From positions 166,446 through 230,445 of IMG/VR virus record IMGVR_UViG_3300044974_001280: 64,000 nt of DNA. One strand, 5' to 3'. Within the stretch, counting starts at the first letter, position 1, and each line of letters starts with the position of its first letter. Positions 12,958-61,167 of this stretch are shown here, one piece after another. Position numbers and translations under genes: made by a program. Under the pieces are notes generated by a model. That model did no database searches, was not told the DNA's origin, and worked only from the letters and a program-made list of their open reading frames with translations.

Positions 12958-13599
12958 ATGAACAATTCATACAACTTAAATTTAGATGGTATCATGGATG
13001 GACATCTAAAAACTTTATATAGAGGAATTATAACTGAAAAATCCCCATTTGATTACGTAATGTATCAAATGATAATTAATGAAATAAGACCCGATTTGAT
13101 AATAGAAATAGGGACTAATTATGGAGGATCGTGTCTGTATTTGGGTGATATTTTAAATAATATAGGTAAAGGTATGGTTCATACTGTGGATATTCAGGAT
13201 GAAACTTTTTTATCAAATTCCGAAGAAAAGAGGGGTTTGATTAATCGACATCCAAGAATTCAGAGATTCTTGGGAGGTTATCAAGAATACAACTTGGATT
13301 ATGCATCCTCATTTAAAAAAATTATGTTGATTGAAGATGGGTCACACAACTATAACGATGTTTTGTCTGTGATGAATAAATTCAAAGATTTAATCAGCGA
13401 AGATTCCTATATGATCGTTGAAGACGGAACTGTGAATTGGATGGGCATCGAAAAAAACTATGACGGAGGTCCTCTTAGAGCGATAGAAGAATTTTTACCA
13501 CAAAATCCACAATTCGAAATAGATAGAAAATGGTGTGATTTTTATGGTTACAATGTCACTTTTAATCCAAATGGATATTTAAAAAAAATTAATTTTTAA
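12958..13599 (+). CDS. CmcI-family (cephalosporin hydroxylase-like) O-methyltransferase
   Basis: KSPFD..YQ..I..IRPDLIIEIGTNYGGS, EDGSH, YMIVED, NPNGYL. Confidence 0.9.
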   Translation: MNNSYNLNLDGIMDGHLKTLYRGIITEKSPFDYVMYQMIINEIRPDLIIEIGTNYGGSCLYLGDILNNIGKGMVHTVDIQDETFLSNSEEKRGLINRHPRIQRFLGGYQEYNLDYASSFKKIMLIEDGSHNYNDVLSVMNKFKDLISEDSYMIVEDGTVNWMGIEKNYDGGPLRAIEEFLPQNPQFEIDRKWCDFYGYNVTFNPNGYLKKINF

Positions 13600-13606
13600 A
13601 AGAATT

Positions 13607-15519: not shown

Positions 15520-15520
15520 C

Positions 15521-16255
15521 ATGGATCTTTCTTTGGTTGTTCACACGTGTGATTCGTACCATCAGTTTTGGTTTGGTATGTTGTATTCCTTAGACCTGTA
15601 CTGGGATTTTGAAAAAATCCCTGTTTATTGGGCATCCGAAGAACGGAATGTCAAGGATTTTGAACTTTCGTGCAGGGGTCACCTCTTCAAGCCTAACTCC
15701 GCGATGCAAAGCATTTTGACCGGAAAGACGGATAAAAATGGATTTTCCACCAGAATGAAAAAAACCTTATCCGAAATTACCTCAAAATGGATCATTTATC
15801 TCCAGGAAGATATGTGGCTAAAATCTTCTTTTCCCTATCCCGTTTTAGAACAACTTTTGCTGTTCGCAGAAGTCCAAAAGGCGGAATCCATCAAGATTCA
15901 CACCAAATTACACTATTACGATGCCTACCGCCTAGATCCTACCCCTTACGTCATTAACAAGGTTAGGATCATGAAGCACAGTCAAGGAGAAAATTATCTC
16001 CACTCTCATAATGCAACTATCTGGAATAGAGAGTACTTAATCCAAAACATTGTTGATGGAGAAGATCCCTGGACAAACGAGGTTGAAGGGTCTAAAAGAA
16101 TGAGCAGCAAAGTTCACAATCATTATCACTATAACGTCCACTGGTATTCCCAGCCTGGAGTTTGTGATAAGGGCCAACCTTCAGCAGAGTATTACCTTAT
16201 GGGTCCTATTTTAGATGACCTAATGAGCATGAAATTATCGTCCGAAAAATTTTAA
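15521..16255 (+). CDS. Glycosyltransferase-like protein
   Basis: VVHTCDSY, YLQEDMWL, ATIWNREYL, DPWTNE. Confidence 0.65.
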   Translation: MDLSLVVHTCDSYHQFWFGMLYSLDLYWDFEKIPVYWASEERNVKDFELSCRGHLFKPNSAMQSILTGKTDKNGFSTRMKKTLSEITSKWIIYLQEDMWLKSSFPYPVLEQLLLFAEVQKAESIKIHTKLHYYDAYRLDPTPYVINKVRIMKHSQGENYLHSHNATIWNREYLIQNIVDGEDPWTNEVEGSKRMSSKVHNHYHYNVHWYSQPGVCDKGQPSAEYYLMGPILDDLMSMKLSSEKF

Positions 16256-16266
16256 AAATAAACAGC

Positions 16267-16548
16267 ATGCAAATCCCCCCTAAAAGAATCAGAAAGCCAG
16301 AGGATTCTCTGATGAAACATTATCAGGAACAATACGTCAGAAATCAAAACAAGTGGATTCGAAGATCCAAACTCTTGCCAGAACACTTAGATCAAGAATT
16401 TCTATTGGAAGGTGAAAAATACTGTCTTCGGGGTAGTACCAGTCCCGTTCAAGTTGTGGTTGAAAAAAAATCCACCTCCGAATACTTTATCATGTCCATT
16501 GATCCCGTTACAAAATCAATTTTAGGAGAGCCAGAAGTTGAAGATTAA
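16267..16548 (+). CDS. Hypothetical protein
   Basis: Co-directional ORF. Confidence 0.65.
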   Translation: MQIPPKRIRKPEDSLMKHYQEQYVRNQNKWIRRSKLLPEHLDQEFLLEGEKYCLRGSTSPVQVVVEKKSTSEYFIMSIDPVTKSILGEPEVED

Positions 16549-16744
16549 GATTCTTACCACCTCGCCCAGAACACATCTGGAAGTTTGTTCCCTTATTAAT
16601 CTTCATAAGGTTGAAATCTTAGAAAACAAATTTGATGAAGAAGGATTTTATAGTTTTTTTTTACTAGAAAGTCTACCTATCTACGTTGATGATTTTATTC
16701 TAATTCCCGACATAAAAGTTCACTGGAACAAGGAAATCCAGTAA
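16538..16744 (+). CDS. Hypothetical protein
   Basis: TTG start overlapping the previous ORF. Confidence 0.5.
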   Translation: MKIKILTTSPRTHLEVCSLINLHKVEILENKFDEEGFYSFFLLESLPIYVDDFILIPDIKVHWNKEIQ

Positions 16745-16779
16745 AAAATGAGTCCTGATGCAGATATATAATCTCAGTT

Positions 16780-17181
16780 ATGGAAACTCAAAAACCGATT
16801 TCAGAGATCATCAGGGAGGTTTTACAGGATGAATTAAACTCTATGAGGGAAAGATCTCCAGGCCACGATCTAAGGATCATCCAGATCAGCATGGAGGAAC
16901 TCAAAGCAGCTCAGTCTGAAATGAAAAAAGATCTCTCGGAGCTAAAGAAAAAACTTCTGGATCCAGATGATGGTGTGATCGTCAAAGTAAACGAAAACAC
17001 CAAATTCAGACTAGAACAACAGAGACAGAAGGAGAAAGATGAGGTTGAATACCGGAACCTCTTACTAGAACACTCTGACCTCATGAAGTGGAAAGGGGGG
17101 ATCACCAAAGCTATGTGGATCTTTTTCACCACTTTGGTTGGGATTTTAGCAAAAATCTTTTTCCTATCTGATACAAATTAA
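16780..17181 (+). CDS. Coiled-coil protein with a C-terminal transmembrane helix
   Basis: GATATATA upstream; C-terminal AMWIFFTTLVGILAKIFF. Confidence 0.7.
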   Translation: METQKPISEIIREVLQDELNSMRERSPGHDLRIIQISMEELKAAQSEMKKDLSELKKKLLDPDDGVIVKVNENTKFRLEQQRQKEKDEVEYRNLLLEHSDLMKWKGGITKAMWIFFTTLVGILAKIFFLSDTN

Positions 17182-17190
17182 AAAAACACC

Positions 17191-17376
17191 ATGTCAAATC
17201 CACAAACAGTTGCTCCAGACCCTAAACACACCACCGACGATAATTTCGTCAAGTGGTACGATCAAAGGGCTTACAGTTCGAAAGTTGGCTCTCTGGGTAT
17301 GAAGCAGGCCACGGTTGGTAAGCTCATGAAGTTTGAAGAGTTCAAAAAGACTTTCTCGAGCCTCCAATCTAAATAA
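17191..17376 (+). CDS. Hypothetical protein with KLMKFEEF motif
   Basis: Co-directional ORF. Confidence 0.6.
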   Translation: MSNPQTVAPDPKHTTDDNFVKWYDQRAYSSKVGSLGMKQATVGKLMKFEEFKKTFSSLQSK

Positions 17377-17468
17377 TTTTTCTTTACAATTTCTTTCAAT
17401 ACCCTTGAAAAATTGAAATTTTTTGAATTTTTGGGCTATAAACAGGAGTTCATTAAAACAAATTTAAC

Positions 17469-18521
17469 ATGAAATTAAAATTGGAGTATGTTTGGTTAGA
17501 TGGATATCAACCCGAACCAAATTTGAGATCAAAAGTAAAGATTTTCGATTATACCCCGTCAAATCTGAACACTCTTTCGCCCCAACACGCAAAACCTAGA
17601 CCAGAAGAACTTCCAGAATGGTCTTTTGATGGAAGTTCCACCCGGCAGGCTGAAGGTAATTTCTCAGATTTGATTCTAAAACCAGTGAGGGTTTATGCAG
17701 ATCCTCTCAGAATGGGCTTTTGCTATCTCGTAATGTGTGAGGTTCTAAATCCAGACCGCACCCCACATTCTTCCAATACTAGAGCCTTGATCGGAAAGGA
17801 TTCTCATGCTCTTTGGTTTGGGTTTGAGCAAGAGTATGTGCTCAGGTGGTTCAATAAAAATAGTAATCGGCCGGTAGGATTTGAAAATTTCAACCCACCC
17901 GAGTCTCAGGGCAAGTATTATTGTTCAGTCGGTCATCCTTATTCCGCTGGCAGAAATATTTCAGAGGAACATTTGGATGCCTGTCTTTCTTGTGGCATTC
18001 AGATCACAGGCACCAATGCCGAAGTGATGCTCGGTCAGTGGGAATATCAGGTTTTTGGCCAGGGAGAACAGACGGCCGCAGATGATCTTTGGATATCTAG
18101 ATTTTTGCTCATGAGAATTGCAGAAAATTACCAGATCAAAGTTGACTTTCACCCCAAGCCCATGGGAGCAGAGGAAGATTGGAACGGATCAGGAATGCAC
18201 ACCAATTTTTCAAATAATAGAATGAGAGAAACAGGAGGGGAAGAATTTTTTAACAGCATTTGTCAAGTGCTGGAAAAAACCCACGATGTTGCTATTTCCC
18301 TCTATGGATCGGACAATCATCTGAGACTTACCGGCAAGCACGAAACCCAAAGCATTTCGAAATTCAGTTGGGGTGTAAGTGATAGAGGAGCATCAATCAG
18401 AATACCCATTTCTACCTCTGATAAGTGGTTGGGTTATCTTGAAGACAGGAGACCAGGATCAAATGCGGATCCTTATAAAATCACCAAATATCTCTCCAAC
18501 TCTCTCGAGGAATTAGAATAA
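17469..18521 (+). CDS. glnA: Glutamine synthetase type II
   Basis: LEYVWLDG, WSFDGSST, WFGFEQEY, NAEVMLGQWEYQ, DWNGSGMHTNFS, DRGASIRIP, YLEDRRP. Confidence 0.97.
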   Translation: MKLKLEYVWLDGYQPEPNLRSKVKIFDYTPSNLNTLSPQHAKPRPEELPEWSFDGSSTRQAEGNFSDLILKPVRVYADPLRMGFCYLVMCEVLNPDRTPHSSNTRALIGKDSHALWFGFEQEYVLRWFNKNSNRPVGFENFNPPESQGKYYCSVGHPYSAGRNISEEHLDACLSCGIQITGTNAEVMLGQWEYQVFGQGEQTAADDLWISRFLLMRIAENYQIKVDFHPKPMGAEEDWNGSGMHTNFSNNRMRETGGEEFFNSICQVLEKTHDVAISLYGSDNHLRLTGKHETQSISKFSWGVSDRGASIRIPISTSDKWLGYLEDRRPGSNADPYKITKYLSNSLEELE

Positions 18522-19666: not shown

Positions 19667-21202
19667 ATGAGTCAAATTTCACTCAAGGACCTAGCCGAAA
19701 AATTCTCAGAGGAAATCTGGTCTTTACACGGTCAAGGTTTTTCTCATACTGAGATAGCCAAAAAATTGGTTTCCGAAAAATTTCTAAATCTGGGCACTTC
19801 GGCCATTGATTCTTTTAGAAGAGCAATCTCTGCCAAGCTGTCAGAAGAATTACCGGAAGATGTTCTAAGACAATCGATCGAGGAAAAATTCAGGCAGGAG
19901 GAAATTCCTCCTTCTATGGAATTAGAAATCGACAAAGAGGAGGAAAAAATAGCCCGGTCTGCCTACAAAAAATACAAGCACAACACCAACTACTACTATG
20001 ATGAGGCAAAAGATCTCTATATAGTGTACATCAAGAACAAAGCCTATCGATTTACCGGCACCATCATTAGGGACATGAAATCCCGTTATTCTTCTCTGAC
20101 CGGCAGTGCAGAAACCATCAACGAAATCTGTCGGAATTTCGAAATACCTAGAAACATATTTACCGCCCTTAAATCTATTCTGGGCTGGACCCACGACTCC
20201 GAACCCTATACCGACGAAGAAATGTTCGTCCGAGACGAGGAAGAGATGGTTTCAGATGCTCTACAAAAAAGAAAATTTTCATTCTTCCAGAAATACACCC
20301 GGCAAGAGGAAAAAATGATCAAAGAGGCAGCCTCAAATTGGTGGGCTTTTAAGGGTCTGGTTATCAATCCTTTGGCCGAAAAATTATCCCAGGTTTTTGC
20401 CCAGTACGAGGTTCCTAAATTGACCCTGCCTCCCGGAGAACCTCATTCCCTCGTTATTTCTCCCTTTGATCTGCACTACGGGAAATATGCCTGGTCAGGA
20501 GAGGTGAGGGATGAATACAACCGTCAAATGGCCCGGGATTTATTACTCGGAAAAACTGCCTCCATCTTGTCCGATGTTGTTAAGTATCAGATTGAGAAAA
20601 TTATTATTCCTGTAGGATCCGATTTTTTTCATGTTGATACCCTCGGTGGAACCACGACCAAAGGCACACCTCAGGACTGCGATGGTACTTTTATCCAGAT
20701 CATGGTGGAGGGCCAGCAACTGATGGTAGAATTCATCGATATCCTGAGAGGGGTGGCTCCCGTTGAGATTTTATTAACTGCGGGCAATCACGACTTCAAA
20801 CTTTCTCATGTTCTTTTGGAGTATTTGGGAGCCTATTATAGGAGCTGTGAAGATGTAGAGGTGATTAAATGTCATAAATTCCGTCAGTACTACGAATACG
20901 GTGAAAATCTCATGGGATTCACGCACGGTGACGGAACCAAACTTTCAGAGCTTCCTTACCTTATGGCCAGAGAAGCTCCTGATTTTTGGTCCAGAACCAA
21001 ACACAGATTCTTCTTTACTGGACACCTGCATCATGAGATGGTGAAGGACTTCAATGGGGTGAAGGTTTATCAAATGCCGAGTCTGTCTGGTTCTGATAGA
21101 TGGCATCACCAACACGGGTTTGAAGGATCCAATAGAGCTCTTCAAGCCTATCTGATTCATCCCTCCGAAGGCATGAAAATAACTTTTGTTGCCTCAGTTT
21201 AA
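19667..21202 (+). CDS. Calcineurin-like metallophosphoesterase with an N-terminal HTH-like region
   Basis: DLHYGK, GSDFFH, GNHD, THGD, GHLHH. Confidence 0.85.
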   Translation: MSQISLKDLAEKFSEEIWSLHGQGFSHTEIAKKLVSEKFLNLGTSAIDSFRRAISAKLSEELPEDVLRQSIEEKFRQEEIPPSMELEIDKEEEKIARSAYKKYKHNTNYYYDEAKDLYIVYIKNKAYRFTGTIIRDMKSRYSSLTGSAETINEICRNFEIPRNIFTALKSILGWTHDSEPYTDEEMFVRDEEEMVSDALQKRKFSFFQKYTRQEEKMIKEAASNWWAFKGLVINPLAEKLSQVFAQYEVPKLTLPPGEPHSLVISPFDLHYGKYAWSGEVRDEYNRQMARDLLLGKTASILSDVVKYQIEKIIIPVGSDFFHVDTLGGTTTKGTPQDCDGTFIQIMVEGQQLMVEFIDILRGVAPVEILLTAGNHDFKLSHVLLEYLGAYYRSCEDVEVIKCHKFRQYYEYGENLMGFTHGDGTKLSELPYLMAREAPDFWSRTKHRFFFTGHLHHEMVKDFNGVKVYQMPSLSGSDRWHHQHGFEGSNRALQAYLIHPSEGMKITFVASV

Positions 21203-25240: not shown

Positions 25241-26317
25241 ATGAGAAACGTACTAGAAGATTATAAGGAAAGGGGCCTGCTCCACTCCCAGTCCCATCCT
25301 CGCTTTCCGCTGACAATTTGGAACTACAGCGAAAAGGTTCAATACGATGGATTATGGGACGATGTGACCCTTATGTGTAGAGGTCTTATTACCGATGATG
25401 TTACCGGCGGGATCCTTGTTAAACCCTTTCCAAAGTTTTTCAACTACGAAGAAATTGTGAACAAAGGACAAATTCCAACCCAAGGAGACTGTGTGTATGT
25501 GCAGGAAAAGGCGGATGGCTCTTTAGGCATACTGTTTTACTACGAGGGTGAATGGATTATGGCTACCCGGGGTTCTTTTACCTCAGACCAGGCAATAAAG
25601 GGATTAGAGATGGTTCAATCCAAATACAAGTTGGATAGTTGGATAAAAGAATACGCGTACTTGGTTGAGATCATCTACCCGGAAAATCGTATCGTTGTAA
25701 ATTACGGGGAAGAAAAAGTCATATTTTTATCTGCGGTCCCCAATAATTTTTACAAACAAACCAACGAAGAAGAATTACATTGGTCTATGGCCTGTGATGT
25801 CTTTAAGTTCAACGGTGTCTCTGATAAAGACATCACCCAAACAAAGCAGCATTTTAACTTTTCCGATCAGTTATACCGTAGTTTGAAGGCACAGAACGAT
25901 GTTAACAAGGAGGGTTTCGTTCTTAGATTTCAACCTGGTAACTTTCGGATGAAAATTAAATTTGAGGAGTATCTCAGGTTGCACAGAATAATGACAAATG
26001 TTACTTCCACTTCGATCTGGGAGGTCTTGTCTACCGGAGGTGACATGTCAGCCATCCTTGTCGACACCCCCGATGAGTTTTATGGAAAGGTGACAGGATA
26101 TGCCAACGAGCTGATAAGTCAATACCAGGAGGTAGAGAAGGAGTATTTGGCTATCTTCGACACCCTCAAGAGCATAAAAGATTTCAAGTGGAGAGCTAGT
26201 TTTGCCGAAGAAGCAAAAAAATACAAAAATCCTTCCCTTTTATTTAAAATGTACGATCGTAAGGAATACTCCTCATTAATTTGGAAAATAATAAAACCCC
26301 AATTTTATAAAATTTAA
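25241..26317 (+). CDS. rnlA: T4 Rnl1-family RNA ligase
   Basis: CRGL, PFPKFFN, motif I EKADGSL, ATRGSF, EIIYPENRIVV, EGFV, KIKFEEY. Confidence 0.92.
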   Translation: MRNVLEDYKERGLLHSQSHPRFPLTIWNYSEKVQYDGLWDDVTLMCRGLITDDVTGGILVKPFPKFFNYEEIVNKGQIPTQGDCVYVQEKADGSLGILFYYEGEWIMATRGSFTSDQAIKGLEMVQSKYKLDSWIKEYAYLVEIIYPENRIVVNYGEEKVIFLSAVPNNFYKQTNEEELHWSMACDVFKFNGVSDKDITQTKQHFNFSDQLYRSLKAQNDVNKEGFVLRFQPGNFRMKIKFEEYLRLHRIMTNVTSTSIWEVLSTGGDMSAILVDTPDEFYGKVTGYANELISQYQEVEKEYLAIFDTLKSIKDFKWRASFAEEAKKYKNPSLLFKMYDRKEYSSLIWKIIKPQFYKI

Positions 26318-37061: not shown

Positions 37062-38132
37062 ATGGAACAAACCAGAAAATTAGCTTCCATCAGATTGGTC
37101 AAGGAGATCAAGTCCATCAAAGGAGCAGACGCCATCGAATTGGCTGTTGTTGATGGGTGGCAGGTGGTAACCAAGAAAGGAGAGTTTAAACCTGGAGATA
37201 CCTGTGTTTATTTTGAGATTGATTCTTTTCTTCCGGTCCGGGATGAATTTGAGTTTCTCCGAAAATCATCTTTCAAGAAAATGGGAGATGTCGAGGGATT
37301 TAGACTCAAGACCATCCGTTTGAAAGGAGAATTATCCCAGGGATTGCTCATGCCCCTGAATGTGCTTCCCGTTAGGGGAAATGTATATCTTGGCATGGAT
37401 GTAACCGAAATTCTTGGGGTGATTAAATACGAACCACCCATTCCCGCCGAACTGGCTGGCAAAGTAAAAGGCTACTTTCCTTCTTTTCTCCGCCGAACCG
37501 ATGAGGAAAGGGTCCAAAATTTGTCTAGAGAATACGAAGAATGGAAGATCACCAGTAAACACCAGTTCTATGCAACCGAAAAGTTGGACGGCAGTTCCGC
37601 ATCATTTTATGTCAAAGACGGTGAATTTGGGGTTTGCTCTAGAAATCTCGAGTTGGCAGAACCAGGTGAATTTGTGTCAGGAACGGAACTGTGCGATGAT
37701 GGGATCGAACGGCCTAAGCGGGAAAACACTTTCTGGAAAGTGGCCCGTGAAATGGACATCAAGAAGAAGCTACTGGATACTGGTCTTAACCTTTGCATTC
37801 AGGGTGAATTGATCGGGGAAGGAATTCAGAAGAATCCTTACAAGCTCAAAGGTCATACCGTTCGTTTCTACAATGCTTTTGACATTGATAAACAGGAAAG
37901 ATTCAACCTCAGATCTTTTATCTCCCTTATGGAAGACTTAGGATTTGAGACCGTACCGATTCTCGGGACTGAGTTTCTTCTACCAGACACCATCGAAGAA
38001 CTCTTACAGCAGACTGAAGGGAAATCTGTTCTCAACCCCAATGCCGAGAGGGAAGGATTGGTCATTCGCAGCATGGACACAACTATTTCTTTCAAGGTCA
38101 TCAGCAACAGATTTTTACTTAAAAACGAATAG
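37062..38132 (+). CDS. RNA ligase, DRB0094/Rnl5 family
   Basis: RKLASI..I..I.GADAIE, YFEIDS, TDEERVQN, TEKLDGSS, QGELIG, REGLV, SFKVISN. Confidence 0.93.
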   Translation: MEQTRKLASIRLVKEIKSIKGADAIELAVVDGWQVVTKKGEFKPGDTCVYFEIDSFLPVRDEFEFLRKSSFKKMGDVEGFRLKTIRLKGELSQGLLMPLNVLPVRGNVYLGMDVTEILGVIKYEPPIPAELAGKVKGYFPSFLRRTDEERVQNLSREYEEWKITSKHQFYATEKLDGSSASFYVKDGEFGVCSRNLELAEPGEFVSGTELCDDGIERPKRENTFWKVAREMDIKKKLLDTGLNLCIQGELIGEGIQKNPYKLKGHTVRFYNAFDIDKQERFNLRSFISLMEDLGFETVPILGTEFLLPDTIEELLQQTEGKSVLNPNAEREGLVIRSMDTTISFKVISNRFLLKNE

Positions 38133-51807: not shown

Positions 51808-52569
51808 ATGGAACAACAAAATTACACATTAGAACAGGCCGCCGAAAAATTTGGAAAACCGCATAAAATATTTGATATTCAAATAGGAGATAGACTTTAT
51901 CCAGTTTACTCAATTGATGGATATGAACACAATTTAGGTAAATGGAATGGGTGTCCTGATACATGGTGGTTAGACTACTCAGTTTATCATTCGGATAATG
52001 ATGATGAAGTACCAACCATGAGAGAGCTTATCCCATACATCGATACGGGTGTTCATAGAGTTTGCTGGGAAATAAATTATAGACAATTTAATTCAACCAA
52101 ATATAAGTGGGATGAGTGGAGCATCAGAAATGGTGGGATATGTACAATTAAAGCAAATGGTAAGGAAGTTTATAAATTTCATTGGAGAGATTTAGGAGGG
52201 GCATTGGCTGAAGCACATTCTTTGATAAGTAAAATATCAGAACATCCTTTTAATTTCATAAACCCAGAAAAAGAGATTGGAAGAAAAATATGGTATTATG
52301 GATTACCGGCCACAATCTTATTGGGATATGAACCCGGAGAAATTAGGATTAATCCCGATTTGAGTTATATGACATCGGATGAATGGTGGAATGAGTTGGA
52401 AAAAAGAAAATCAAATGTGAAACCACCAAACTCAACACAAAACGAAGATGATTTGCTGGATGCTGAACATTTTGCAGAACATAAAGATTATGGTTCGATA
52501 AATCATGGTAGTGTTTTTTATGATGGAATGATTAATTGGTTTAGACATGAAAAAAAAGATGATGAATAA
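51808..52569 (+). CDS. Hypothetical protein
   Basis: 253 aa ORF. Confidence 0.75.
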   Translation: MEQQNYTLEQAAEKFGKPHKIFDIQIGDRLYPVYSIDGYEHNLGKWNGCPDTWWLDYSVYHSDNDDEVPTMRELIPYIDTGVHRVCWEINYRQFNSTKYKWDEWSIRNGGICTIKANGKEVYKFHWRDLGGALAEAHSLISKISEHPFNFINPEKEIGRKIWYYGLPATILLGYEPGEIRINPDLSYMTSDEWWNELEKRKSNVKPPNSTQNEDDLLDAEHFAEHKDYGSINHGSVFYDGMINWFRHEKKDDE

Positions 52570-52672
52570 AGAAGAAATACAACACTGGATTAATCGTTGG
52601 TCAAAACTAAAAGGCCCAAGAGCAGAAGCGGTAGTAAACATTTGGAAAAAACATCTAAAACACTAGAAAGTT

Positions 52673-53128
52673 ATGAACGACAAACACAAAATGCTATATT
52701 CAGCAAACAAATTAAGAGATGTGTTATCATCAATTGAAGATATTCTCGAAGGGTATGAAGGGATAGAAGGTAATAAAAATTATGTGAAGTATTGCTATAA
52801 CAAAGCAAAAGAAGCTCACTCTGTTGATGATGAATTAGTTAAAATGACTGAAGACACTTATGCTATTGATTTATCACAACGTAGAGGTATTAATATTGCA
52901 ACATTAACACATAAACTTGAATTTATGTTTAAGTTGTTAGATGATATCGACACGGCAAGTGATATGTTTAAACCTAAATGGTGTAAAATATCTAGCGTTG
53001 TATCTCACCTTCAACAACTCAGATGGATTTATTGTACCGTTGAAACTGAAAAAAATGAAAGTGGCGATATGATAATAAATGGGGAATGTTTTAAAAAAGA
53101 AGATAGAATTTTACTCCAGTTATCTTAA
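52673..53128 (+). CDS. Hypothetical protein
   Basis: LLDDIDTASDMFKP. Confidence 0.7.
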   Translation: MNDKHKMLYSANKLRDVLSSIEDILEGYEGIEGNKNYVKYCYNKAKEAHSVDDELVKMTEDTYAIDLSQRRGINIATLTHKLEFMFKLLDDIDTASDMFKPKWCKISSVVSHLQQLRWIYCTVETEKNESGDMIINGECFKKEDRILLQLS

Positions 53129-53155
53129 CATACAACAACAAAACTATAGAAAGTC

Positions 53156-53449
53156 ATGAATAAAATAGAAATAACACCTGTACCTGAAATTGTTGCAAAT
53201 ACACAACGAGTATGTGAAATCAGATTTGATTGTTTGGTTACAATGCATGATGTGGCATACAGAAAATATGAAGGATTTTTAGGCGAAGAAAAATGGTCTA
53301 AAACACCACAATGGTTTAAAGCCAACCATAGAATAACATTAGAAGGTGTTAAGCATGCCGACCCATATGAACTTGGGATGAGAATTAAACAAATGTTCCA
53401 TCAGATGGAAGATACAATTAACAAATATGAAAATGGAATAAATTATTAA
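53156..53449 (+). CDS. Hypothetical protein
   Basis: Co-directional ORF. Confidence 0.65.
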   Translation: MNKIEITPVPEIVANTQRVCEIRFDCLVTMHDVAYRKYEGFLGEEKWSKTPQWFKANHRITLEGVKHADPYELGMRIKQMFHQMEDTINKYENGINY

Positions 53450-53453
53450 ATAT

Positions 53454-53642
53454 ATGAATAACACAAAATTTAAAGTAGGAGATAAAGCGTGGAAACCGAA
53501 AGGATATAAATTTCCTTGCACAATTGTATCCGTATTCACAACAATAAAAGGTGAAATTAGATTAGTAGCCGAAATGGATGAATATGGATTATTACACATT
53601 TTTAACGAACAACAATTAGAACATTATGAACAACCTCGATAA
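53454..53642 (+). CDS. Small SH3-like hypothetical protein
   Basis: KFKVGD...KGY.F...[15 protein letters not shown]. Confidence 0.65.
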
Positions 53643-53943
53643 ACAGTATCAATCACTACTCCAAGATATATTAGATAATGGAGTGGAAAAGAAAGATAGA
53701 ACAGGTACTGGTACTATTTCAGTATTTGGTAGACAAATCCGTCATAAAATGAGTGAAGGGTTTTCACTTCTTACAACCAAGAAAATGGCGTGGAAGTCAA
53801 TATGTACAGAATTACTTTGGTTTTTAAGAGGCGATACATCAATAGAGTATCTTCTTAAAAATGACTGTAACATTTGGACGGGGGATGCTTATCAAGCATA
53901 CCTAAAAGAATGTGAGAAGTTAAAGAAAGATGAGGAAAAATAA
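53626..53943 (+). CDS. thyA: Thymidylate synthase, N-terminal fragment
   Basis: [35 protein letters not shown]. Confidence 0.92.
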
Positions 53944-53952
53944 TGACTTTTG

Positions 53953-53986
53953 TTGGTTTTTAGATATTTATTATAAAAGAAACCAA
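53953..53986 (+). promoter_or_regulatory. Hairpin occluding the endonuclease start, with an ATATTTAT promoter-like motif in the loop
   Basis: TTGGTTT (53953-59) pairs with AAACCAA (53980-86); ATG at 53988. Confidence 0.5.
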
Positions 53987-53987
53987 A

Positions 53988-54959
53988 ATGTGTCTAAAAA
54001 CTAAAATTGAAACAACCTTGTGTGTTATAAAAAATAATGAGTATAAAATATTGTCTCAAAAATTAAGAGTAATTGAATCATCACTTAAACAGGATATTAT
54101 TGATAGTACTCAATATCTAACTATTTACAATCCTAAATTGGTTGATAGGATAAGGTATATCTTGAAAGATAGAAACTCCGTTAATACTTGCTTCCATTGT
54201 GGTAACCCAATTATTGATTTGAATAGAAAATTTTGTTCTGCAAAGTGTAATAACAATTCGGAACTAACTAAAAATAAATTTAGAGAAAGATATAATAGTT
54301 TATCGGAAACAGATAAAATCATAAGAAATAATAAAAGACGTAAAACTGTTAATGAAAAATACGGTGGTTATACTTTACAAAGTCCTGAACTAAAAAAGAA
54401 AATTAAATCAACTATGATTAAAAAATATGGTGTTGAACATTCTTTTCATAGTGATGCAATAAAACAAAAAGCGTTAAATACTTGGATTAAAAAGTATGGT
54501 GTTGACAACCCGTTTAAATCTCACAGTATAAAAGAGAAAATAAAGCAAGTATTAAAAGATAAATACGGGGTTAATAATTCCGCTAATATTAACTCGGAAA
54601 ATAGAATTGGTAATGGTATTAAAACAAAAATCGAAAGAGGATGGATAATACCTGATGAGTTTTTGTCGGATTACCAAATTTATAGAAAAAAAGTTAAACG
54701 ATTAACTGAAACAACATATAAAATGTATAAAAACATTATAAACCCAAATAATTTAGAAAGAGTAACAAATGGAAAAATTGGGTTCCAATTAGACCACAAA
54801 TACTCAATAATTGAAGGATTTTTGAATAATGTAGAACCTGAAATTATTAGTCATCACTGTAATCTACAAATGATAGAATGGAGTAGTAATAGAACTAAAA
54901 GTAAAAGATGTGATATTGATTTAGAACAATTAAAAAATGAAATAAAAAGTTATGAATAA
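53988..54959 (+). mobile_element. Free-standing HNH-type homing endonuclease inserted in thyA
   Basis: CxxC..FCS..C, KYG repeats (KYGGY, KYGVEH, KYGVDN, KYGVNN), LDHKYSI...NLQMI...N..K. Confidence 0.8.
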
Positions 54960-55752
54960 AGAACACTTACACCCAGATGGAAGACCATACACCCAAGAAG
55001 AATTCATCAACAAAATCAAAACAGATGATGAGTTTGCTAAGAAGTGGGGTGATTTGGGACCAATTTATGGTAAACAGTGGAGAAAATGGAAAACCGAAGT
55101 TGCTATTCCAACAACATTAAAAATTGATGATGGTGATGATATTGAACCCTTATATGTAAAAGGAACACAGTATATTGACCAAATCCAAAACCTAATCAAC
55201 GACCTTAAAACAAATCCTGATAGTAGGAGATTAATGGTTTCGGCTTGGAATGTAGGTGAATTAGACCAAATGGTTCTCCCACCTTGTCATTATGGATTTC
55301 AAGTTTATACAAGAGAGTTAAGTTATGAAGAACGGTGTAATATATTTCAATCAACAGAAAGATTTAAAATGGAAACCCGAGAACATATTAAAGAGTTAAA
55401 TATTAAAATAATGAATGAAGCCGAAGTTCCAACCAGAGCAATCTCTCTAATGTGGAATCAACGCTCAGTAGATACATTCTTGGGTTTACCATTCAACATT
55501 GCTTCTTATGGATTATTATTGGAAATGATTGCAGATGAAGTACAAATGATACCTGATGAATTGATTGGTAATTTAGGAGATACACATTTGTATTTAAATC
55601 ATATTGAACAAGCAAAAGAGCAAATAAAAAGAGAACCATTTAGACTACCAAATGTTCACGTTAGAGATGGTATCGAATCATTTATGCCAGGAGATATTAT
55701 TTTAGAAAATTATGTATCACATCCAACAATTAAAGCGCCCCTGTCCAATTGA
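54952..55752 (+). CDS. thyA: Thymidylate synthase, C-terminal fragment
   Basis: GDLGPIYGKQWR, PDSRRLMVSAWN, LPPCH, QRSVDTFLGLPFNIASY, GDTHLYLNH. Confidence 0.95.
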   Translation: MNKEHLHPDGRPYTQEEFINKIKTDDEFAKKWGDLGPIYGKQWRKWKTEVAIPTTLKIDDGDDIEPLYVKGTQYIDQIQNLINDLKTNPDSRRLMVSAWNVGELDQMVLPPCHYGFQVYTRELSYEERCNIFQSTERFKMETREHIKELNIKIMNEAEVPTRAISLMWNQRSVDTFLGLPFNIASYGLLLEMIADEVQMIPDELIGNLGDTHLYLNHIEQAKEQIKREPFRLPNVHVRDGIESFMPGDIILENYVSHPTIKAPLSN

Positions 55753-55823
55753 CATGAAAAATAACCTACAATTAAAACACCTTTTTCACAACTTTCATAT
55801 ATTTATACCAAAAGAAATAATAT

Positions 55824-56481
55824 ATGGCAGTTGTTTATTTACACAAAAAGAAAAATACTAATGAAGTTTTTTATGTTGGGATTGGCCTTTATGAAGAAAG
55901 AGCTTATTCTTATAGAAATAGAAACATACATTGGAAAAACGTTGTTGCTAAATATGGATATGATGTTGAAATTATTGAATCGGATATTGAATGGGAAGGT
56001 GCATGTGACACTGAAAAATATTTAATTCAAAAATATGGTAGAGATATGTTGACAAATATGACAGATGGGGGTGAGGGGTTATTCAATCCATCAGATGAAG
56101 TTAGAGAAAAGTTAAGATACGCAAGAACAGAAGAGCAAAAACAAAAATTAAGAGAATATCAAATTGGGGTAACGCAATCCGAAGAAACAATACAAAAAAG
56201 AATATCACATGGATTTCATAAATCTGATGAGTATAGATATAAAATGAGCATTGCATTATCAGGTGATAATAATCCAATGAAAAAAGGAGAGAATAGAGAA
56301 AAATTAAGGAAACCAAAACCACCAAGAACAAAAGAACATAGTAACAAAATAAGTGAAACCAAAAAAGGGAAAACCTACATGGAACAAAGGTAAAACTTTA
56401 GAAAAATTTGTTTGTGATATTTGTAGCAAACAAATTGGTGGGTATGGTAATCTAGTACAACACAAAAAGAAACATTTATGA
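55824..56481 (+). mobile_element. GIY-YIG/NUMOD3 homing endonuclease with a 1-nt frameshift near 56365
   Basis: VYLH..FYVGIG..RA, LTNMTDGGEG, NUMOD3 repeats; the +1 frame continues GKPTWNKGK..CDIC..HKKKHL*. Confidence 0.8.
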
Positions 56482-56498
56482 AATTAAAAATATAATTT

Positions 56499-57062
56499 AT
56501 GAAATCAAATTTAACAGAAAAACTACTATCAATCTGCGGAAGTGCAGATAAAACTTATGGTTATAATGATATTGAATCGATAACTAAACTATCAGAAGAA
56601 CAACGTATTCAAGTAGAAGCAGAACTAATTAAACATTTTGAGTTTGATAAGATTATATGGATGGAATTACCTTCAGGTCTTACTGAAGACAAGACAACTC
56701 CCATTGTTGCGAAATCTATTAAAATATCAGATTCCGAAAATCCAACTTATAAACATAAAGTAGGATATGTTTATACTATATCATTTACTCCAAAAATATA
56801 CGAACCAGAAGAGATGTATAAGCCAGTAAAAGATGGGTGTGTGTTTGCACCTATAACATTTAACCCAGAAACCTTTGAACCAAAACAAAGTATAACATTA
56901 ACTTGGTCACCTGAGTTTCCTCAAGATATTGACGCGCCTAAAAGAACATATGAAGATGATAAACAAATGATTCGTAATATGTTAGAAAGAGTATTAGATA
57001 ATCCTGAAGAGTATAGACCTATGGGATATACTGGGTGTACATTACGATATGCGGTACTATAA
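56499..57062 (+). CDS. Hypothetical protein
   Basis: 187 aa ORF. Confidence 0.7.
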   Translation: MKSNLTEKLLSICGSADKTYGYNDIESITKLSEEQRIQVEAELIKHFEFDKIIWMELPSGLTEDKTTPIVAKSIKISDSENPTYKHKVGYVYTISFTPKIYEPEEMYKPVKDGCVFAPITFNPETFEPKQSITLTWSPEFPQDIDAPKRTYEDDKQMIRNMLERVLDNPEEYRPMGYTGCTLRYAVL

Positions 57063-57092
57063 TCACATCCAGCAATTAAAAAAATATAAGTT

Positions 57093-57662
57093 ATGAGCAC
57101 AACATCACACGCAAAATTTGAATTAGAATTAGCAGGCTTCTTTGGAGAAGATTCTGACTATGGAGGAGCCATCGGAGAGGCAGTTATGGAACTAATGGAG
57201 GTATTTGAAAAACAAGGACACTCAGGTGGTTCAGCACCGATTGTAGCCTCTTTATTTCACAAATTAGCTAACTACAAACCACTGGGGCCTATTACAGGTA
57301 AAGATGAAGAGTGGGGAAATGTTAGTGATTTAGCAGGTAAACCTTGGTATCAAAACAAAAGAGAGGGTGGATTGTTTAAGGATAAGGATGGTAGGGTTAC
57401 ATATAATGACGCTATTATCAAAAGATGTCCTAATGGAACAACTTGGTCAGGACCTATTTACATGACTCGAGAGGATGCTATCAACAATACAAACCGATTT
57501 CATAGTTCTTTGGAAATTAAAGGATTTCCATTTACACCAAAAACATTTTACATTGATGTGTTGGAGGAAGAAATTAAAAAAGATGATTGGATTATGTGGG
57601 TAAAAGACCCAAAACAATTGGATGAAGTATGGGAGTATTACAAAAAACCTGATTTTTTATGA
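57093..57662 (+). CDS. Conserved phage hypothetical protein
   Basis: FEKQGHSGGSA, PLGPITG.DEEW, YQNKR. Confidence 0.8.
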   Translation: MSTTSHAKFELELAGFFGEDSDYGGAIGEAVMELMEVFEKQGHSGGSAPIVASLFHKLANYKPLGPITGKDEEWGNVSDLAGKPWYQNKREGGLFKDKDGRVTYNDAIIKRCPNGTTWSGPIYMTREDAINNTNRFHSSLEIKGFPFTPKTFYIDVLEEEIKKDDWIMWVKDPKQLDEVWEYYKKPDFL

Positions 57663-57916
57663 GCAACTACAAAATATTTAAAAGTGTGTATGTAGATGAG
57701 TATGGTAAAGAAGGTACACCATTTTTTTGGATTAAAAAAAGGAAAACCTTTATAGGAATACCTTATTGGAAGTCTATAAGACATTATGATGGTGGGGAAT
57801 ATACCGGCCTTACTAGATTTTATAATTATGATGATGCTCTTAATTTCATTCAAAATGTGTTAGAAAAAGGGATAAAACTCGATGATATAAATACTGAACT
57901 TGTACATATTTATTAG
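57659..57916 (+). CDS. Hypothetical protein
   Basis: ATGA overlap. Confidence 0.65.
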   Translation: MSNYKIFKSVYVDEYGKEGTPFFWIKKRKTFIGIPYWKSIRHYDGGEYTGLTRFYNYDDALNFIQNVLEKGIKLDDINTELVHIY

Positions 57917-58000
57917 ATAATGAAAAACAATATTTAAAGCAGATTTATAAGAAAGATATTAAAAAATAACAATACCTTTATCAAATTAAAAATTTAAATT

Positions 58001-60324: not shown

Positions 60325-61167
60325 ATGTTACTAAAAATTGGGTCCAAAGGAGAGGACGTGAAAAAACTCCAGTCTAAATTGGGATTAAGTCCCGACGGTG
60401 TCTTTGGACCTGGAACGGAAGCCAAAGTCAAAGAATGGCAAAAGGCCAACGGTCTTGGGACGGATGGCATAGTGGGTCCGGGGACTTGGAACAAGATGTT
60501 CGTCACCTTAGCTCCTGTCTCTGAATCTGTCAAGTCCCAAACTACTACGGGATCCCAGTCTAGTCCCGCCTTGAAATTGGACAAACTGAAAGGACACGTA
60601 CCAGACTCTGTTATTGCAGAAATCCCCGATACGGCAGCTAAATTTGGCATCACCACCCCTCTGAGACTTGCTCACCTATTAGCTCAGGCATCGCACGAGT
60701 CGGGCCATTTCAAATCAGTGACAGAGAATTTGAATTATTCCGCTGATGGTTTGAAAAAAATATTCCCTAAGTACTTTCCTGGGAATTTAAATGAGTCTTA
60801 TGCAAGAAACCCACAAAAGATAGCAAACAAAGTTTATTCTTCGAGAATGGGGAATGGCGATGAGGCTTCAGGCGATGGATTCCGATATAGGGGAAGGGGT
60901 TTCTTGCAAACCACTGGCAAATCTAACTATGCAGAATTCAATAAAATAGTTGATGATGACGTAATAGCAAATCCGGATCTGGTAGCAACTAAATATGCTC
61001 TTGCCTCTGCCGCCTTCTTTTTCCAAAAAAATAACTTGTGGTCTATCTGTGACAGAGGTGCTTCAGATGAGATAGTTACATTAGTTAGTAAAAGAGTAAA
61101 CGGAGGTACAATTGGACTTAGCGAACGTTTATCAGAGTTTAAAAAATTTTATGCACTTCTCAATTAA
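60325..61167 (+). CDS. Endolysin: peptidoglycan-binding domain plus GH19
   Basis: LKIGSKGEDVKKLQ..DGVFGPGT; LAQASHESG, ENLNYS, GDGFRYRGRG, VNGGTIGL. Confidence 0.93.
   Translation: MLLKIGSKGEDVKKLQSKLGLSPDGVFGPGTEAKVKEWQKANGLGTDGIVGPGTWNKMFVTLAPVSESVKSQTTTGSQSSPALKLDKLKGHVPDSVIAEIPDTAAKFGITTPLRLAHLLAQASHESGHFKSVTENLNYSADGLKKIFPKYFPGNLNESYARNPQKIANKVYSSRMGNGDEASGDGFRYRGRGFLQTTGKSNYAEFNKIVDDDVIANPDLVATKYALASAAFFFQKNNLWSICDRGASDEIVTLVSKRVNGGTIGLSERLSEFKKFYALLN

What the first reader, a model, noticed from the sequence alone, without database searches (positions are those of the whole stretch)
53626..55752. thyA split into two separately translated genes by a free-standing HNH endonuclease, with no intron
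Seen: the N-half stops at 53943. Only 44 nt separate it from the endonuclease, whose end overlaps the ATG of the C-half (54952), so there is no room for a group I intron core and the stops exclude an intein. Both halves keep their ThyA motifs, and the break lies in the variable insert after NIW.GDAY. Established: phage Aeh1 nrdA is split this way by mobE and assembles post-translationally. Inference: a two-chain thymidylate synthase with a composite active site, which I do not know to be described for ThyA.
Basis: partly seen in the sequence, partly recalled or inferred. Interest (0 to 1): 0.8.

Follow-up and report, generated by a model that had tools for sequence, protein, structure and literature searches.

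The report
Phage thymidylate synthase split by endonuclease
In this uncultured jumbo phage the thymidylate synthase gene is cut into two separately read pieces by a selfish endonuclease gene with no sign of RNA or protein splicing. The same split recurs in many related environmental phages with three different endonucleases in the gap, so the enzyme most likely works as two chains.

Summary
ThyA-N is 53626-53943 (105 aa). A 44-nt spacer follows, then a 323-aa ORF at 53988-54959. ThyA-C is 54952-55752 (266 aa), and its ATG overlaps the ORF's stop by 8 nt.

The two pieces are colinear with uninterrupted ThyA of Flavobacterium phage immuto (72% and 69% identity). The break lies in a loop that is hypervariable in this phage clade and about 10 residues long in cellular ThyA.

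No intron family was detected, in the window or in 8 related split loci. This scan found only one of two known T4 introns in a control. The gap holds too little non-coding sequence for a ribozyme core or an intein.

The split is not a one-off:
- 114 of the 120 best short N-half homologs are 103-110 aa.
- 30 fetched metagenomic loci are split at the same point.
- Three unrelated endonuclease genes occupy the gap: a DUF7487 protein with an HNH-like C-terminus, a GIY-YIG-like protein with NUMOD1, and a canonical GIY-YIG.
- Split alleles are scattered among continuous ones in trees, and the endonuclease is much more similar between genomes than the flanking thyA. This indicates a mobile cassette.

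Both halves keep their catalytic residues and evolve under purifying selection. This is a new instance (thyA) of the known "genes-in-pieces" kind, first described for phage Aeh1 nrdA/mobE. Activity of the two-chain enzyme is inferred, not shown.

The parts
53626..53943 (+). thyA-N: 105-aa N-terminal piece of thymidylate synthase. It carries the DRTGTGT phosphate-binding Arg, the TELLWF Glu and the IW folate-site Trp, and ends in a split-specific tail, [14 protein letters not shown].
   Evidence: ORF list and sequence. PF00303 profile 1-90, E 1e-30. Residues 4-97 align to L. casei TS 2-95 and residues 6-85 to E. coli TS 2-81. 72% identical to immuto ThyA. Core pN 0.11-0.21 against pS 0.65-0.85; tail pN 0.15-0.20 against pS 0.64-0.84.
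53944..53987 (+). 44-nt spacer. An 8-bp hairpin (arms 53953-53960 and 53979-53986) ends 1 nt before the endonuclease ATG. Its 18-nt loop holds the promoter-like motif TATTTATTATAAAA (53965-53978).
   Evidence: Sequence. 94% column identity across 9 type-A loci, although the adjacent ORF has pS 0.16-0.74. RNA fold z = -1.96 for a longer alternative stem. The motif recurs 4-15 nt upstream of ATGs elsewhere in related phages. The regulatory role is inferred.
53988..54959 (+). Free-standing homing-endonuclease gene, type A, 323 aa. It has a Cys4 zinc ribbon (C68, C71, C83, C87), DUF7487 DNA-binding repeats (aa 115-201) and a C-terminal HNH-like beta-beta-alpha module (about aa 262-305, nt 54771-54902).
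   Evidence: PF24308 E 6e-16. phrog_3339 'homing endonuclease' E 3e-17. The N-terminal region is related to F-LimIII of Dickeya phage LIMEstone1. Invariant D269, H270, N292, N301, K304. AF2 topology. HNH-carrying neighbours in the ESM Atlas. Intact at 323 codons with pN/pS 0.12-0.39 in 9 loci.
54952..55752 (+). thyA-C: 266-aa C-terminal piece. It starts with the split-specific head MNKEHLHPDGRPY, followed by TQEEFINKIKTDDEF...GDLGPIYGKQW, DSRR, PPCH (the catalytic Cys), QRSVD, PFNIASY and GDTHLY.
   Evidence: PF00303 profile 76-265, E 3e-63. Alignments to E. faecalis and E. coli TS. 69% identical to immuto ThyA. Motifs are present in all 20 complete split C-halves, with conservative variants shared with continuous sister alleles. 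The start codon is conserved: ATG in all alleles, GTG in two.
55824..56393 (+). Second free-standing endonuclease-like gene immediately after thyA-C (GIY-YIG-like N-terminus, NUMOD3). It is a neighbour, not part of the split.
   Evidence: NUMOD3 E 2e-6. phrog_314 'homing endonuclease' E 3e-15. It is preceded at 55800-55813 by the same promoter-like motif with 2 mismatches.

Best explanation
A free-standing homing-endonuclease gene sits in a dispensable surface loop of a phage thyA gene and divides it into two cistrons, which are translated separately. The 105-aa and 266-aa products most likely associate non-covalently to rebuild the thymidylate synthase fold. Two such pairs would then form a (N.C)2 equivalent of the normal homodimer. 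Active-site residues would come from both chains: Arg21, Glu58 and Trp80 from N, and Cys146, Arg166, Asp169, Asn177, His207, Tyr209 and the Arg126'/127' pair from C (E. coli numbering). The unit 'tail - promoter-like spacer - endonuclease - head' behaves as a mobile cassette. It is shared by thyA alleles that are otherwise unrelated, and three unrelated endonuclease genes have occupied the same gap. The most likely route of spread is cleavage of endonuclease-less thyA alleles during co-infection, followed by repair from the split donor, which converts continuous genes into split ones. Shown: the anatomy, the recurrence, the mosaicism and the sequence constraint. Inferred: assembly and activity of the two chains, the nuclease activity and its target, and the regulatory role of the spacer.
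For: Anatomy.

Recurrence: 2468 short N-half homologs, and 114 of the 120 best are 103-110 aa. Split loci number 21 of 80 in IMG/VR and 9 of 59 resolvable JGI metagenome loci, against 0 of 54 in cellular or MAG genomes. All share the tail YLKECEK... and the head ..LH..GRP.TQEEF.

Three unrelated gap ORFs occur. Type A has DUF7487 with an HNH-like C-terminus, type B has NUMOD1 with a GIY-YIG-like N-terminus, and type C has GIY-YIG with NUMOD1. One locus has a decayed type B ORF while both thyA halves remain open (L019).

Mobility: split alleles are not monophyletic in the C-core tree, where several are well-supported sisters of continuous alleles, nor in the N-core tree, where at least 4 changes are forced. 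Between WIN and L035 the endonuclease plus about 100 nt upstream and 50 nt downstream is 90-100% identical, while the thyA flanks are 22-83% identical. Endonuclease pS is 0.16-0.17 where thyA-C pS is about 0.5.

Constraint: core blocks of both halves have pN 0.11-0.25 against pS 0.6-0.85. Catalytic motifs are intact in all complete split alleles.

Break site: the loop is 34-82 aa and hypervariable in continuous phage alleles, and a median of 10 aa in cellular ThyA. It maps between L. casei TS residue 95 and E. faecalis TS residue 121.

No splicing element: no Rfam intron hit at E<=10 in 52000-58000 or at E<=1 in 8 split loci of all three types. Only 44 nt of the gap is non-coding, and the 3' ends of the three endonuclease types are unrelated. 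No terminator-like site lies between the cistrons.
Against: No RNA, protein or activity data exist.

The Rfam negative is only suggestive. In the control, the T4 td intron scored 40.3 bits (E 1e-7, below the gathering score) and the T4 nrdB intron was missed at E<=1.

Recombination with continuous alleles is rampant. Part of the purifying-selection signal in the halves may therefore have been earned while those segments sat in uninterrupted genes.

No endonuclease-less split allele and no exact 'empty site' allele was found, so the insertion event and the target site are not defined.

The window also encodes a very divergent second ThyA-superfamily ORF (7762-8538), whose role is unknown.
Confidence: 0.72

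Rival explanations
1. The gap is a self-splicing (group I or II) intron that carries the endonuclease ORF. Splicing would restore a continuous thyA mRNA, as in T4 td, and the apparent tail, stop and new ATG would be intron or unspliced-precursor features.
For: thyA is a classic intron host (T4 td). Intron ORFs can overlap core elements (PMC2988022). The Rfam scan has imperfect sensitivity and missed T4 nrdB. The tail and head are conserved across cassettes with different endonucleases, as an intron core would be.
Against: There is no intron-family hit at E<=10 in the window or at E<=1 in 8 split loci, whereas the td intron is found at E 1e-7 in the same mode. Only 44 nt is non-coding, against about 280 nt in td. 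The three endonuclease types have unrelated 3' ends, so no shared 3' core can lie there. The tail evolves like coding sequence, with pS 0.64-0.84 against pN 0.15-0.20. The C-half start codon is conserved in every allele.
Confidence: 0.05
2. The split killed the gene, and the halves are decaying remnants. They look conserved only because the endonuclease cassette keeps invading intact alleles and recombination keeps importing fresh sequence. The phage would rely on host dTMP or on another enzyme.
For: Recombination and cassette transfer are frequent, so a purely 'post-split' dN/dS could not be isolated. A second, divergent ThyA-superfamily ORF exists in the window.
Against: None of the 25 N-halves or 20 complete C-halves carries a frameshift, premature stop or lost catalytic residue. 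The split-specific tail exists almost only in split alleles, and it is itself under purifying selection and has diverged substantially at synonymous sites. 114 distinct 90%-identity clusters of N-halves of about 105 aa at 78-93% identity imply long persistence. One locus shows the endonuclease decaying while both thyA halves stay open (L019).
Confidence: 0.12
3. The halves are joined after translation by a split intein (the 'fractured gene' arrangement of Dassa et al. 2009), or the insert is an intein.
For: Fractured genes also have a free-standing endonuclease gene between two gene halves (PMC2677866).
Against: The sequence beyond the conserved ThyA blocks is about 13-16 aa on each side, far below the roughly 130 aa an intein needs. 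No intein family appears in the Pfam scans of either half. A double stop follows the N-half, and the endonuclease is in another frame.
Confidence: 0.01
4. Only one piece is functional, or the pieces have acquired a new role, for example the C-half acting alone or with a host partner. A reconstituted thymidylate synthase is not formed.
For: Nothing direct. It cannot be excluded without biochemistry.
Against: Residues needed for dUMP and folate binding are divided between the pieces, and all are conserved. Both pieces are always found together, in the same order and on the same strand. The N-half core is the more strongly constrained of the two.
Confidence: 0.05

Closest known systems
Aeromonas phage Aeh1 nrdA split by the free-standing HNH endonuclease gene mobE (Friedrich et al. 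2007 PNAS, as cited in PMC2988022; Crona et al. 2011, PMC3045599)
   Same: A nucleotide-metabolism gene is cut into two cistrons by a free-standing endonuclease gene, without an intron or intein. New C- and N-terminal tails appear at the break. The expected product is an (a/b)2 assembly that replaces a homodimer.
   Different: The host gene is thyA, not nrdA. The break is in a hypervariable, dispensable loop rather than a functionally critical region. The endonuclease belongs to a different family (DUF7487 with an HNH-like C-terminus). The split is found in many diverged genomes with three alternative endonucleases and shows clear horizontal transfer, whereas the published Aeh1 case describes one phage. 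Activity is proven for Aeh1 and only inferred here. Whether the tails are needed for assembly here is unknown.
T4 td group I intron with I-TevI
   Same: The host gene is the same (thymidylate synthase), in a large virulent phage. An endonuclease ORF interrupts it. A hairpin next to the endonuclease start, with a promoter-like element inside it, resembles the arrangement that limits I-TevI translation (PMC2988022).
   Different: There is no ribozyme: 44 nt of non-coding sequence against about 280 nt, and no RF00028 signal, whereas td gives E 1e-7. The insertion site also differs. Here it is the loop after IWxGDAY. In T4 the intron lies further downstream in td (coordinates); my own knowledge places it near the catalytic-Cys block.
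Other endonuclease-associated split phage genes: T4 topoisomerase genes 39/60 with mobA, Aeromonas phage 25 gene 43 with a seg-like gene, and FelixO1-like nrdD (PMC2988022; PMC4837284)
   Same: An essential DNA or nucleotide-metabolism enzyme is encoded as two polypeptides flanking a free-standing endonuclease gene.
   Different: The host gene is different. None of these is reported with several unrelated endonuclease families at one split site.
'Fractured genes' with split inteins and a free-standing endonuclease (Dassa et al. 2009, PMC2677866)
   Same: The gene order is the same: half, endonuclease, half. They were found in environmental metagenomes.
   Different: No intein halves are present here, so no protein trans-splicing is possible.

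Membership tests
Thymidylate synthase ThyA (PF00303) | Significant match to the family profile, with the two pieces together covering it colinearly | tested here: met
   The N-half matches profile 1-90 at 106.9 bits and the C-half matches 76-265 at 214.1 bits, against a cutoff of 24.3. Both match PDB thymidylate synthases.
Thymidylate synthase ThyA (PF00303) | Catalytic and substrate-binding residues: Arg21, Glu58, Trp80, Arg126/127, Cys146, Arg166, Asp169, Asn177, His207, Tyr209 | tested here: met
   The motifs DRTG, ELLWF, IW, SRR, PPCH, (Q/M/A)RSxD, FN(I/L), GDxHxY are present in the window and in all complete split alleles.
Thymidylate synthase ThyA (PF00303) | dUMP to dTMP activity | not testable with these tools
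   This needs an enzyme assay or complementation.
Genes-in-pieces: host gene split by a free-standing homing endonuclease (Aeh1 nrdA/mobE type) | Two adjacent same-strand ORFs colinear with a single gene in relatives | tested here: met
   Alignment to immuto ThyA. More than 100 continuous homologs have the same order of blocks.
Genes-in-pieces: host gene split by a free-standing homing endonuclease (Aeh1 nrdA/mobE type) | The intervening ORF is a homing endonuclease not embedded in an intron or intein | tested here: met
   Homing-endonuclease PHROG families match. The DUF7487 module is shared with annotated homing endonucleases. The alternative occupants carry GIY-YIG and NUMOD1 domains. There is no intron hit and no intein. 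Nuclease activity itself was not tested.
Genes-in-pieces: host gene split by a free-standing homing endonuclease (Aeh1 nrdA/mobE type) | No RNA or protein splicing; two polypeptides are made | tested here: inconclusive
   The computational negatives and the anatomy favour it.
Genes-in-pieces: host gene split by a free-standing homing endonuclease (Aeh1 nrdA/mobE type) | The fragments assemble into an active enzyme | not testable with these tools
   There is only indirect support from purifying selection and persistence. No multimer prediction was available.
Group I intron with an intron-encoded endonuclease (T4 td / I-TevI type) | A conserved ribozyme core (P3-P9) detectable by covariance model | tested here: not met
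   There is no RF00028 hit at E<=10 in 52000-58000 or at E<=1 in 8 split loci. The positive control, T4 td, gave E 1e-7, but T4 nrdB was missed.
Group I intron with an intron-encoded endonuclease (T4 td / I-TevI type) | About 200 nt or more of intron sequence outside the ORF, or a core shared across occupants | tested here: not met
   The spacer is 44 nt and the ORF stop overlaps the C-half ATG. The 3' ends of the three endonuclease types are unrelated.
Intein / split intein | An in-frame insertion without stops, or intein halves of about 100 aa plus about 35 aa at the break | tested here: not met
   A TAA TGA double stop follows the N-half. The endonuclease is in another frame. The tails are about 13-16 aa.
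HNH (beta-beta-alpha-Me) endonuclease | Match to an HNH profile, or structural similarity to HNH structures | tested here: not met
   There is no Pfam or NCBIfam hit for residues 226-323 even at E<=1. A profile search against PDB sequences gave no HNH protein. Foldseek gave nothing at E<=0.001.
HNH (beta-beta-alpha-Me) endonuclease | A conserved His...Asn...Asn/His triad on a beta-hairpin plus helix | tested here: inconclusive
   D269, H270, N292, N301 and K304 are invariant in 29 homologs. The AF2 model has strands 266-270 and 293-297 and a helix 298-304, with pLDDT of about 80-94 in that region. Among the 100 nearest named ESM Atlas clusters, about 43 carry PF01844, with scores around 0.9; this is a lead only.

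The most novel reading that the evidence does not exclude
The split is a heritable, transmissible trait rather than an accident. A 'tail - promoter - endonuclease - head' cassette converts continuous thyA alleles into two-chain alleles as it homes through a large population of freshwater and estuarine Bacteroidota-type jumbo phages. The gap then serves as a landing pad where unrelated endonucleases replace one another. The conserved tail and head may act as assembly domains for a natural heterotetrameric thymidylate synthase. That would make thyA the only gene known to host all of these solutions to endonuclease invasion: an intron in T4 and Bacillus phages, and no splicing here.
Probability: 0.5. 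Interest if true: 0.68.

Novelty: new member of a known kind. Interest (0 to 1): 0.55.

Why it matters
Thymidylate synthase is a textbook obligate homodimer and drug target, and its T4 gene is where the first bacteriophage intron was described (Chu et al. 1984, cited).

A natural version made from two polypeptides would show where the fold tolerates chain scission. It would offer a ready-made split-enzyme pair for complementation or selection systems.

It would also extend the 'genes-in-pieces' solution to endonuclease invasion beyond the few single-phage cases known (nrdA, gene 43, topoisomerase, nrdD).

This case comes with dozens of diverged natural alleles, both split and continuous, and with three alternative endonucleases at one site. 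That gives an unusually good comparative system for three questions: how free-standing endonucleases spread, how they replace each other, and how host genes adapt to them.

For genome annotation, the 105-aa 'thymidylate synthase' fragments that are common in metagenomes should not be called pseudogenes.

Tried and rejected
- **Gathering-threshold Rfam scan of 12 loci.** It was negative, but the control showed that even the T4 td intron scores below gathering. I repeated the scan in E-value mode and treat all Rfam negatives as suggestive only.
- **Confirming HNH.** Pfam and NCBIfam on the C-terminal 98 aa, a profile search against PDB sequences and Foldseek of the AF2 model all gave nothing.
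- **AF2 model of the closest continuous allele (L034).** Mean pLDDT was only 61.7. The helix-coil-helix around the split-equivalent site is not reliable evidence for a disordered loop.
- **dN/dS restricted to the time since the split.** This is impossible because thyA flanks are mosaic even between loci with nearly identical endonucleases. Whole-C-half ratios of about 0.3-0.45 are inflated by three hypervariable, poorly alignable inserts.
- **Search for an exact 'empty site' allele (tail plus head without the endonuclease) and for a split without any endonuclease.** Neither was found among about 160 continuous and 30 split loci. L034 and L059 only share YL(K/R)EC.
- **Sigma-70 promoter and terminator scan.** Not informative: 15 hits against 19.9 expected.
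- **Covariation test of the spacer hairpin.** The spacer is too conserved. Only one-sided U.G to C-G changes occur.
- **Literature.** Five full-text searches and follow-up reading of the candidate papers found no endonuclease-split thyA. The library omits most subscription journals.
Full report
**1. Observation**

The window holds three ORFs on the + strand at the reported place:
- 53626-53943, 105 aa
- 53988-54959, 323 aa
- 54952-55752, 266 aa

The first ORF ends TAA and is followed in frame by TGA. A 44-nt spacer follows. The middle ORF is in another frame, and its last codons contain the ATG of the third ORF (ATGAATAA, 8-nt overlap).

Pfam Thymidylat_synt matches the first ORF over profile positions 1-90 (E 1e-30) and the third over 76-265 (E 3e-63). 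The middle ORF matches DUF7487. PHROGs calls the outer two thymidylate synthase and the middle one homing endonuclease.

The closest cultured relative is Flavobacterium phage immuto. Its ThyA is a single 423-aa protein that is 72% and 69% identical to the two pieces and colinear with them.

The arrangement is not an assembly error. The identical N-half is recorded on 31 contigs of up to 267 kb, and three IMG/VR contigs of 150-230 kb carry the identical locus.

**2. Where the break lies**

Against solved structures:
- N-half residues 4-97 align to L. casei TS 2-95, and residues 6-85 to E. coli TS 2-81.
- C-half residues 15-49 align to E. faecalis TS 121-155.
- The rest of the C-half aligns to the end of the enzyme.

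The break is therefore inside the insertion that long-form (L. casei-type) enzymes carry and E. coli TS lacks. That last statement is from my own knowledge of these structures.

In 105 continuous phage or metagenome alleles, the segment between IWxGD and the LGPIYG motif is 34-82 residues long (median 46) and has almost no sequence conservation. In 54 cellular or MAG homologs its median length is 10 residues. An AF2 model of the closest continuous allele had too little confidence to add anything.

**3. Is anything spliced?**

*Rfam scans*
- A scan of 52000-58000 at E<=10 gave no intron family.
- Eight related split loci covering all endonuclease types gave none at E<=1.
- As a control, the same mode on phage T4 found the td intron (RF00028, 40.3 bits, E 1e-7, below the gathering score) but missed the nrdB intron.
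- The negative result is therefore suggestive, not decisive.

*Anatomy (the stronger argument)*
- Only 44 nt of the 1008-nt gap is non-coding.
- The three endonuclease types found in this gap have unrelated 3' ends, so no common 3' ribozyme core can be hidden there.
- The N-half tail evolves like coding sequence, with pS 0.64-0.84 against pN 0.15-0.20.
- The C-half start codon is conserved in every allele.

*Inteins.* An intein or split intein is excluded by the stops, by the frame, and by tails of only about 13-16 aa.

**4. The split is widespread**

A search with the N-half was limited by design to proteins of 58-184 aa. It returned 2468 hits. Of the 120 best (78-100% identity), 114 are 103-110 aa long.

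| Collection | Split loci | Continuous or total |
|---|---|---|
| IMG/VR | 21 | of 80 fetched |
| Contigs found via two N-half homologs (P0074, P0110) | 4 | all split |
| JGI metagenomes | 9 | of 59 resolvable |
| Cellular or MAG genomes | 0 | of 54 |

No GenBank phage listed in the INPHARED search matches the split-specific tail.

All split alleles stop at the same point. They share the tail ...[18 protein letters not shown].. and the head M..(D/H)LH(E/P)(S/D)GRP(L/Y)TQEEF. The nearest continuous loop (L034: YQAYLRECDK-IVKSHSFSGEPERF-TQEEF) suggests that the insertion lies between ECEK and the ..H..SG.P.. segment.

**5. Three endonucleases, one gap**

| Type | Gap ORF | Loci |
|---|---|---|
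| A | 323 aa (335 aa if read from an upstream alternative start in two loci): zinc ribbon, DUF7487, HNH-like C-terminus | window and 12 other loci |
| B | 232-242 aa: GIY-YIG-like N-terminus with NUMOD1 (E 2e-9) | 18 loci |
| C | 270-283 aa: canonical GIY-YIG (E 5e-6) with two NUMOD1-like repeats | 2 loci |

- L055 combines a B-like endonuclease with an A-like head.
- In L019 the B gene is broken into 160-aa and 97-aa pieces, while both thyA halves remain open.
- Type A is intact at 323 codons in nine loci, with pN/pS 0.12-0.39.

The HNH nature of type A is probable only. D269, H270, N292, N301 and K304 are invariant in 29 homologs. The AF2 model gives strand, strand, helix at 266-304. Language-model neighbours often carry PF01844. 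No profile or fold search confirms it.

DUF7487 is combined with other nuclease domains in distant relatives. It also occurs in annotated homing endonucleases such as F-LimIII.

**6. The cassette moves**

- In a tree of the C-terminal core, split alleles are scattered. Several are strongly supported sisters of continuous alleles: L009 with L037, L011 with L069/L077, L013 with L033, and the window with immuto and L084.
- The N-core tree forces at least four changes of state.
- Between the window and L035, identity is 90-100% across the endonuclease plus about 100 nt upstream and about 50 nt downstream. It falls to 22-83% in the rest of thyA and to background in the neighbouring genes.
- L036 and L087 have endonuclease pS 0.16 but thyA-C pS 0.55.
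- L011 (split) and L069 (continuous) share about 400 nt of 98-100% identity at the 3' end of thyA in otherwise unrelated genomes.

These patterns are what homing with co-conversion would give, together with frequent recombination. The mechanism is inferred. The cleavage site is unknown.

**7. Are the pieces functional?**

- Core blocks of both halves have pN 0.11-0.25 against pS 0.6-0.85 across 14 split alleles.
- All 25 N-halves and 20 complete C-halves are open.
- All keep the catalytic and binding residues. Variants such as MRSTD and FNLASY are shared with continuous sister alleles.

The caveat is that recombination with continuous alleles could import already-purified sequence. Against that, the split-specific tail is itself constrained and has diverged at synonymous sites. 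The many diverged N-half clusters also imply long persistence.

I conclude that a two-chain enzyme is likely. It would be a (N.C)2 assembly with residues from both chains in each active site. It has not been demonstrated.

**8. Expression signals (inferred)**

The type-A spacer is 94% conserved over nine loci, much more than the adjacent coding sequence. It forms an 8-bp hairpin (53953-53960 with 53979-53986) that ends 1 nt before the endonuclease ATG. Its loop holds TATTTATTATAAAA.

The same motif, TATTTAT(A/T)(A/T)TAAAA, is present in the type B and type C spacers. In about 0.93 Mb of related loci it also occurs about 20 times outside thyA, almost always on the coding strand and 4-15 nt before an ATG. 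It therefore looks like a clade-wide promoter element.

A promoter inside a hairpin next to the start codon recalls the control of I-TevI in T4 (PMC2988022). No terminator-like site separates the three cistrons. The stop/start overlap suggests that thyA-C is co-transcribed with the endonuclease and possibly translationally coupled to it.

**9. Comparison and novelty**

This works like the Aeh1 nrdA/mobE 'genes-in-pieces' case, whose two polypeptides assemble through tails created by the insertion (PMC3045599; PMC2988022). It also resembles T4 39/60-mobA, phage 25 gene 43 and FelixO1-like nrdD.

It differs in four ways: the host gene, the neutral location of the break, the endonuclease family, and the population-wide spread with endonuclease turnover.

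Five full-text searches and follow-up reading found no description of an endonuclease-split thyA. The library is incomplete.

My rating is a new member of a known kind, with interest 0.55.

**10. Context**

The window belongs to a jumbo phage of at least 267 kb. Its nearest cultured relative infects Flavobacterium, and the nearest cellular ThyA sequences are from Bacteroidota. A Bacteroidota host is therefore likely, by inference.

Noticed in passing
window 55824-56393 (+), motif at 55800-55813: A second free-standing endonuclease-like gene lies directly after thyA-C. It has a GIY-YIG-like N-terminus and NUMOD3, and matches phrog_314 'homing endonuclease'. It is preceded by the promoter-like motif with 2 mismatches. 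Several relatives (L033, L070, L072) also have a GIY-YIG ORF ('MIGIY..') right after thyA behind the same motif.
   Followed up: partly
window 53965-53978; related loci L001-L165: The motif TATTTAT(A/T)(A/T)TAAAA has 51 exact copies in about 0.93 Mb of related phage loci. About 20 lie outside thyA gaps, nearly all on the coding strand and 4-15 nt upstream of an ATG. It is probably a clade-specific promoter giving very short leaders. Only one copy occurs in this 64-kb window.
   Followed up: partly
window 7762-8538 (+), inside the cluster 5108-18521: This is a very divergent ThyA-superfamily ORF: phrog_160 E 9e-26, Pfam below cutoff, no PDB or BLASTP similarity to the split ThyA. It sits among two family-2 glycosyltransferases, a DNA-methyltransferase-like ORF, an FkbM methyltransferase, a DegT/DnrJ aminotransferase and a glutamine-synthetase-like ORF. 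This may be a pyrimidine hydroxymethylase and DNA hypermodification island.
   Followed up: partly
window 25241-26317 and 37062-38132 (+): The same 64 kb holds two RNA ligase genes (RNA_lig_T4_1, and a PHA02142 OB domain with RNA_ligase). It also holds an SbcD/Mre11-like exonuclease at 19667-21202 and an endolysin (PG_binding_1 with Glyco_hydro_19) at 60325-61167.
   Followed up: no
L011:3341-3580 and 5561-5980 versus L069: Patches of 97-100% nucleotide identity, including the last 400 nt or so of thyA, occur between two phages whose surrounding genes are at background similarity. One has split thyA and the other continuous thyA. Gene-fragment-scale mosaicism is extreme in this clade.
   Followed up: partly
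L019:4321-5060: The type B endonuclease is broken into 160-aa and 97-aa ORFs while thyA-N and thyA-C stay open. This is an example of endonuclease decay inside a persisting split.
   Followed up: no
L055:3657-4401: This is a hybrid cassette. A type-B-like endonuclease (53-66% identical to type B) is combined with a type-A-like C-half head (MNKEHLHPEGRPY). Its stop lies 4 nt before the C-half ATG instead of overlapping it. The endonuclease was evidently replaced within an already split gene.
   Followed up: partly
thyA-C, window about 55095-55160, 55320-55430 and 55620-55700: Besides the split loop, this phage ThyA clade has three more hypervariable insertions: after QWRKW, after YTRELS and after KEQI. 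Continuous proteins therefore range from 319 to 443 aa.
   Followed up: no
thyA-C codons 111-140 (window about 55282-55371): Synonymous divergence among split alleles drops to about 0.34 around GELDQMVLPPCHYGFQVYTRE, against 0.6-0.7 elsewhere. It drops to 0.30-0.42 in the first 30 codons of the C-half. Possible causes are extra nucleotide-level constraint, an endonuclease target, or recent conversion tracts. This is unexplained.
   Followed up: no
L221 (phage T4 134000-150000): Rfam 15 in E-value mode detects the T4 td intron only below the gathering score (40.3 bits against 50) and does not report the T4 nrdB intron at E<=1. 'No Rfam hit' is therefore weak evidence against phage group I introns that carry ORFs.
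   Followed up: yes
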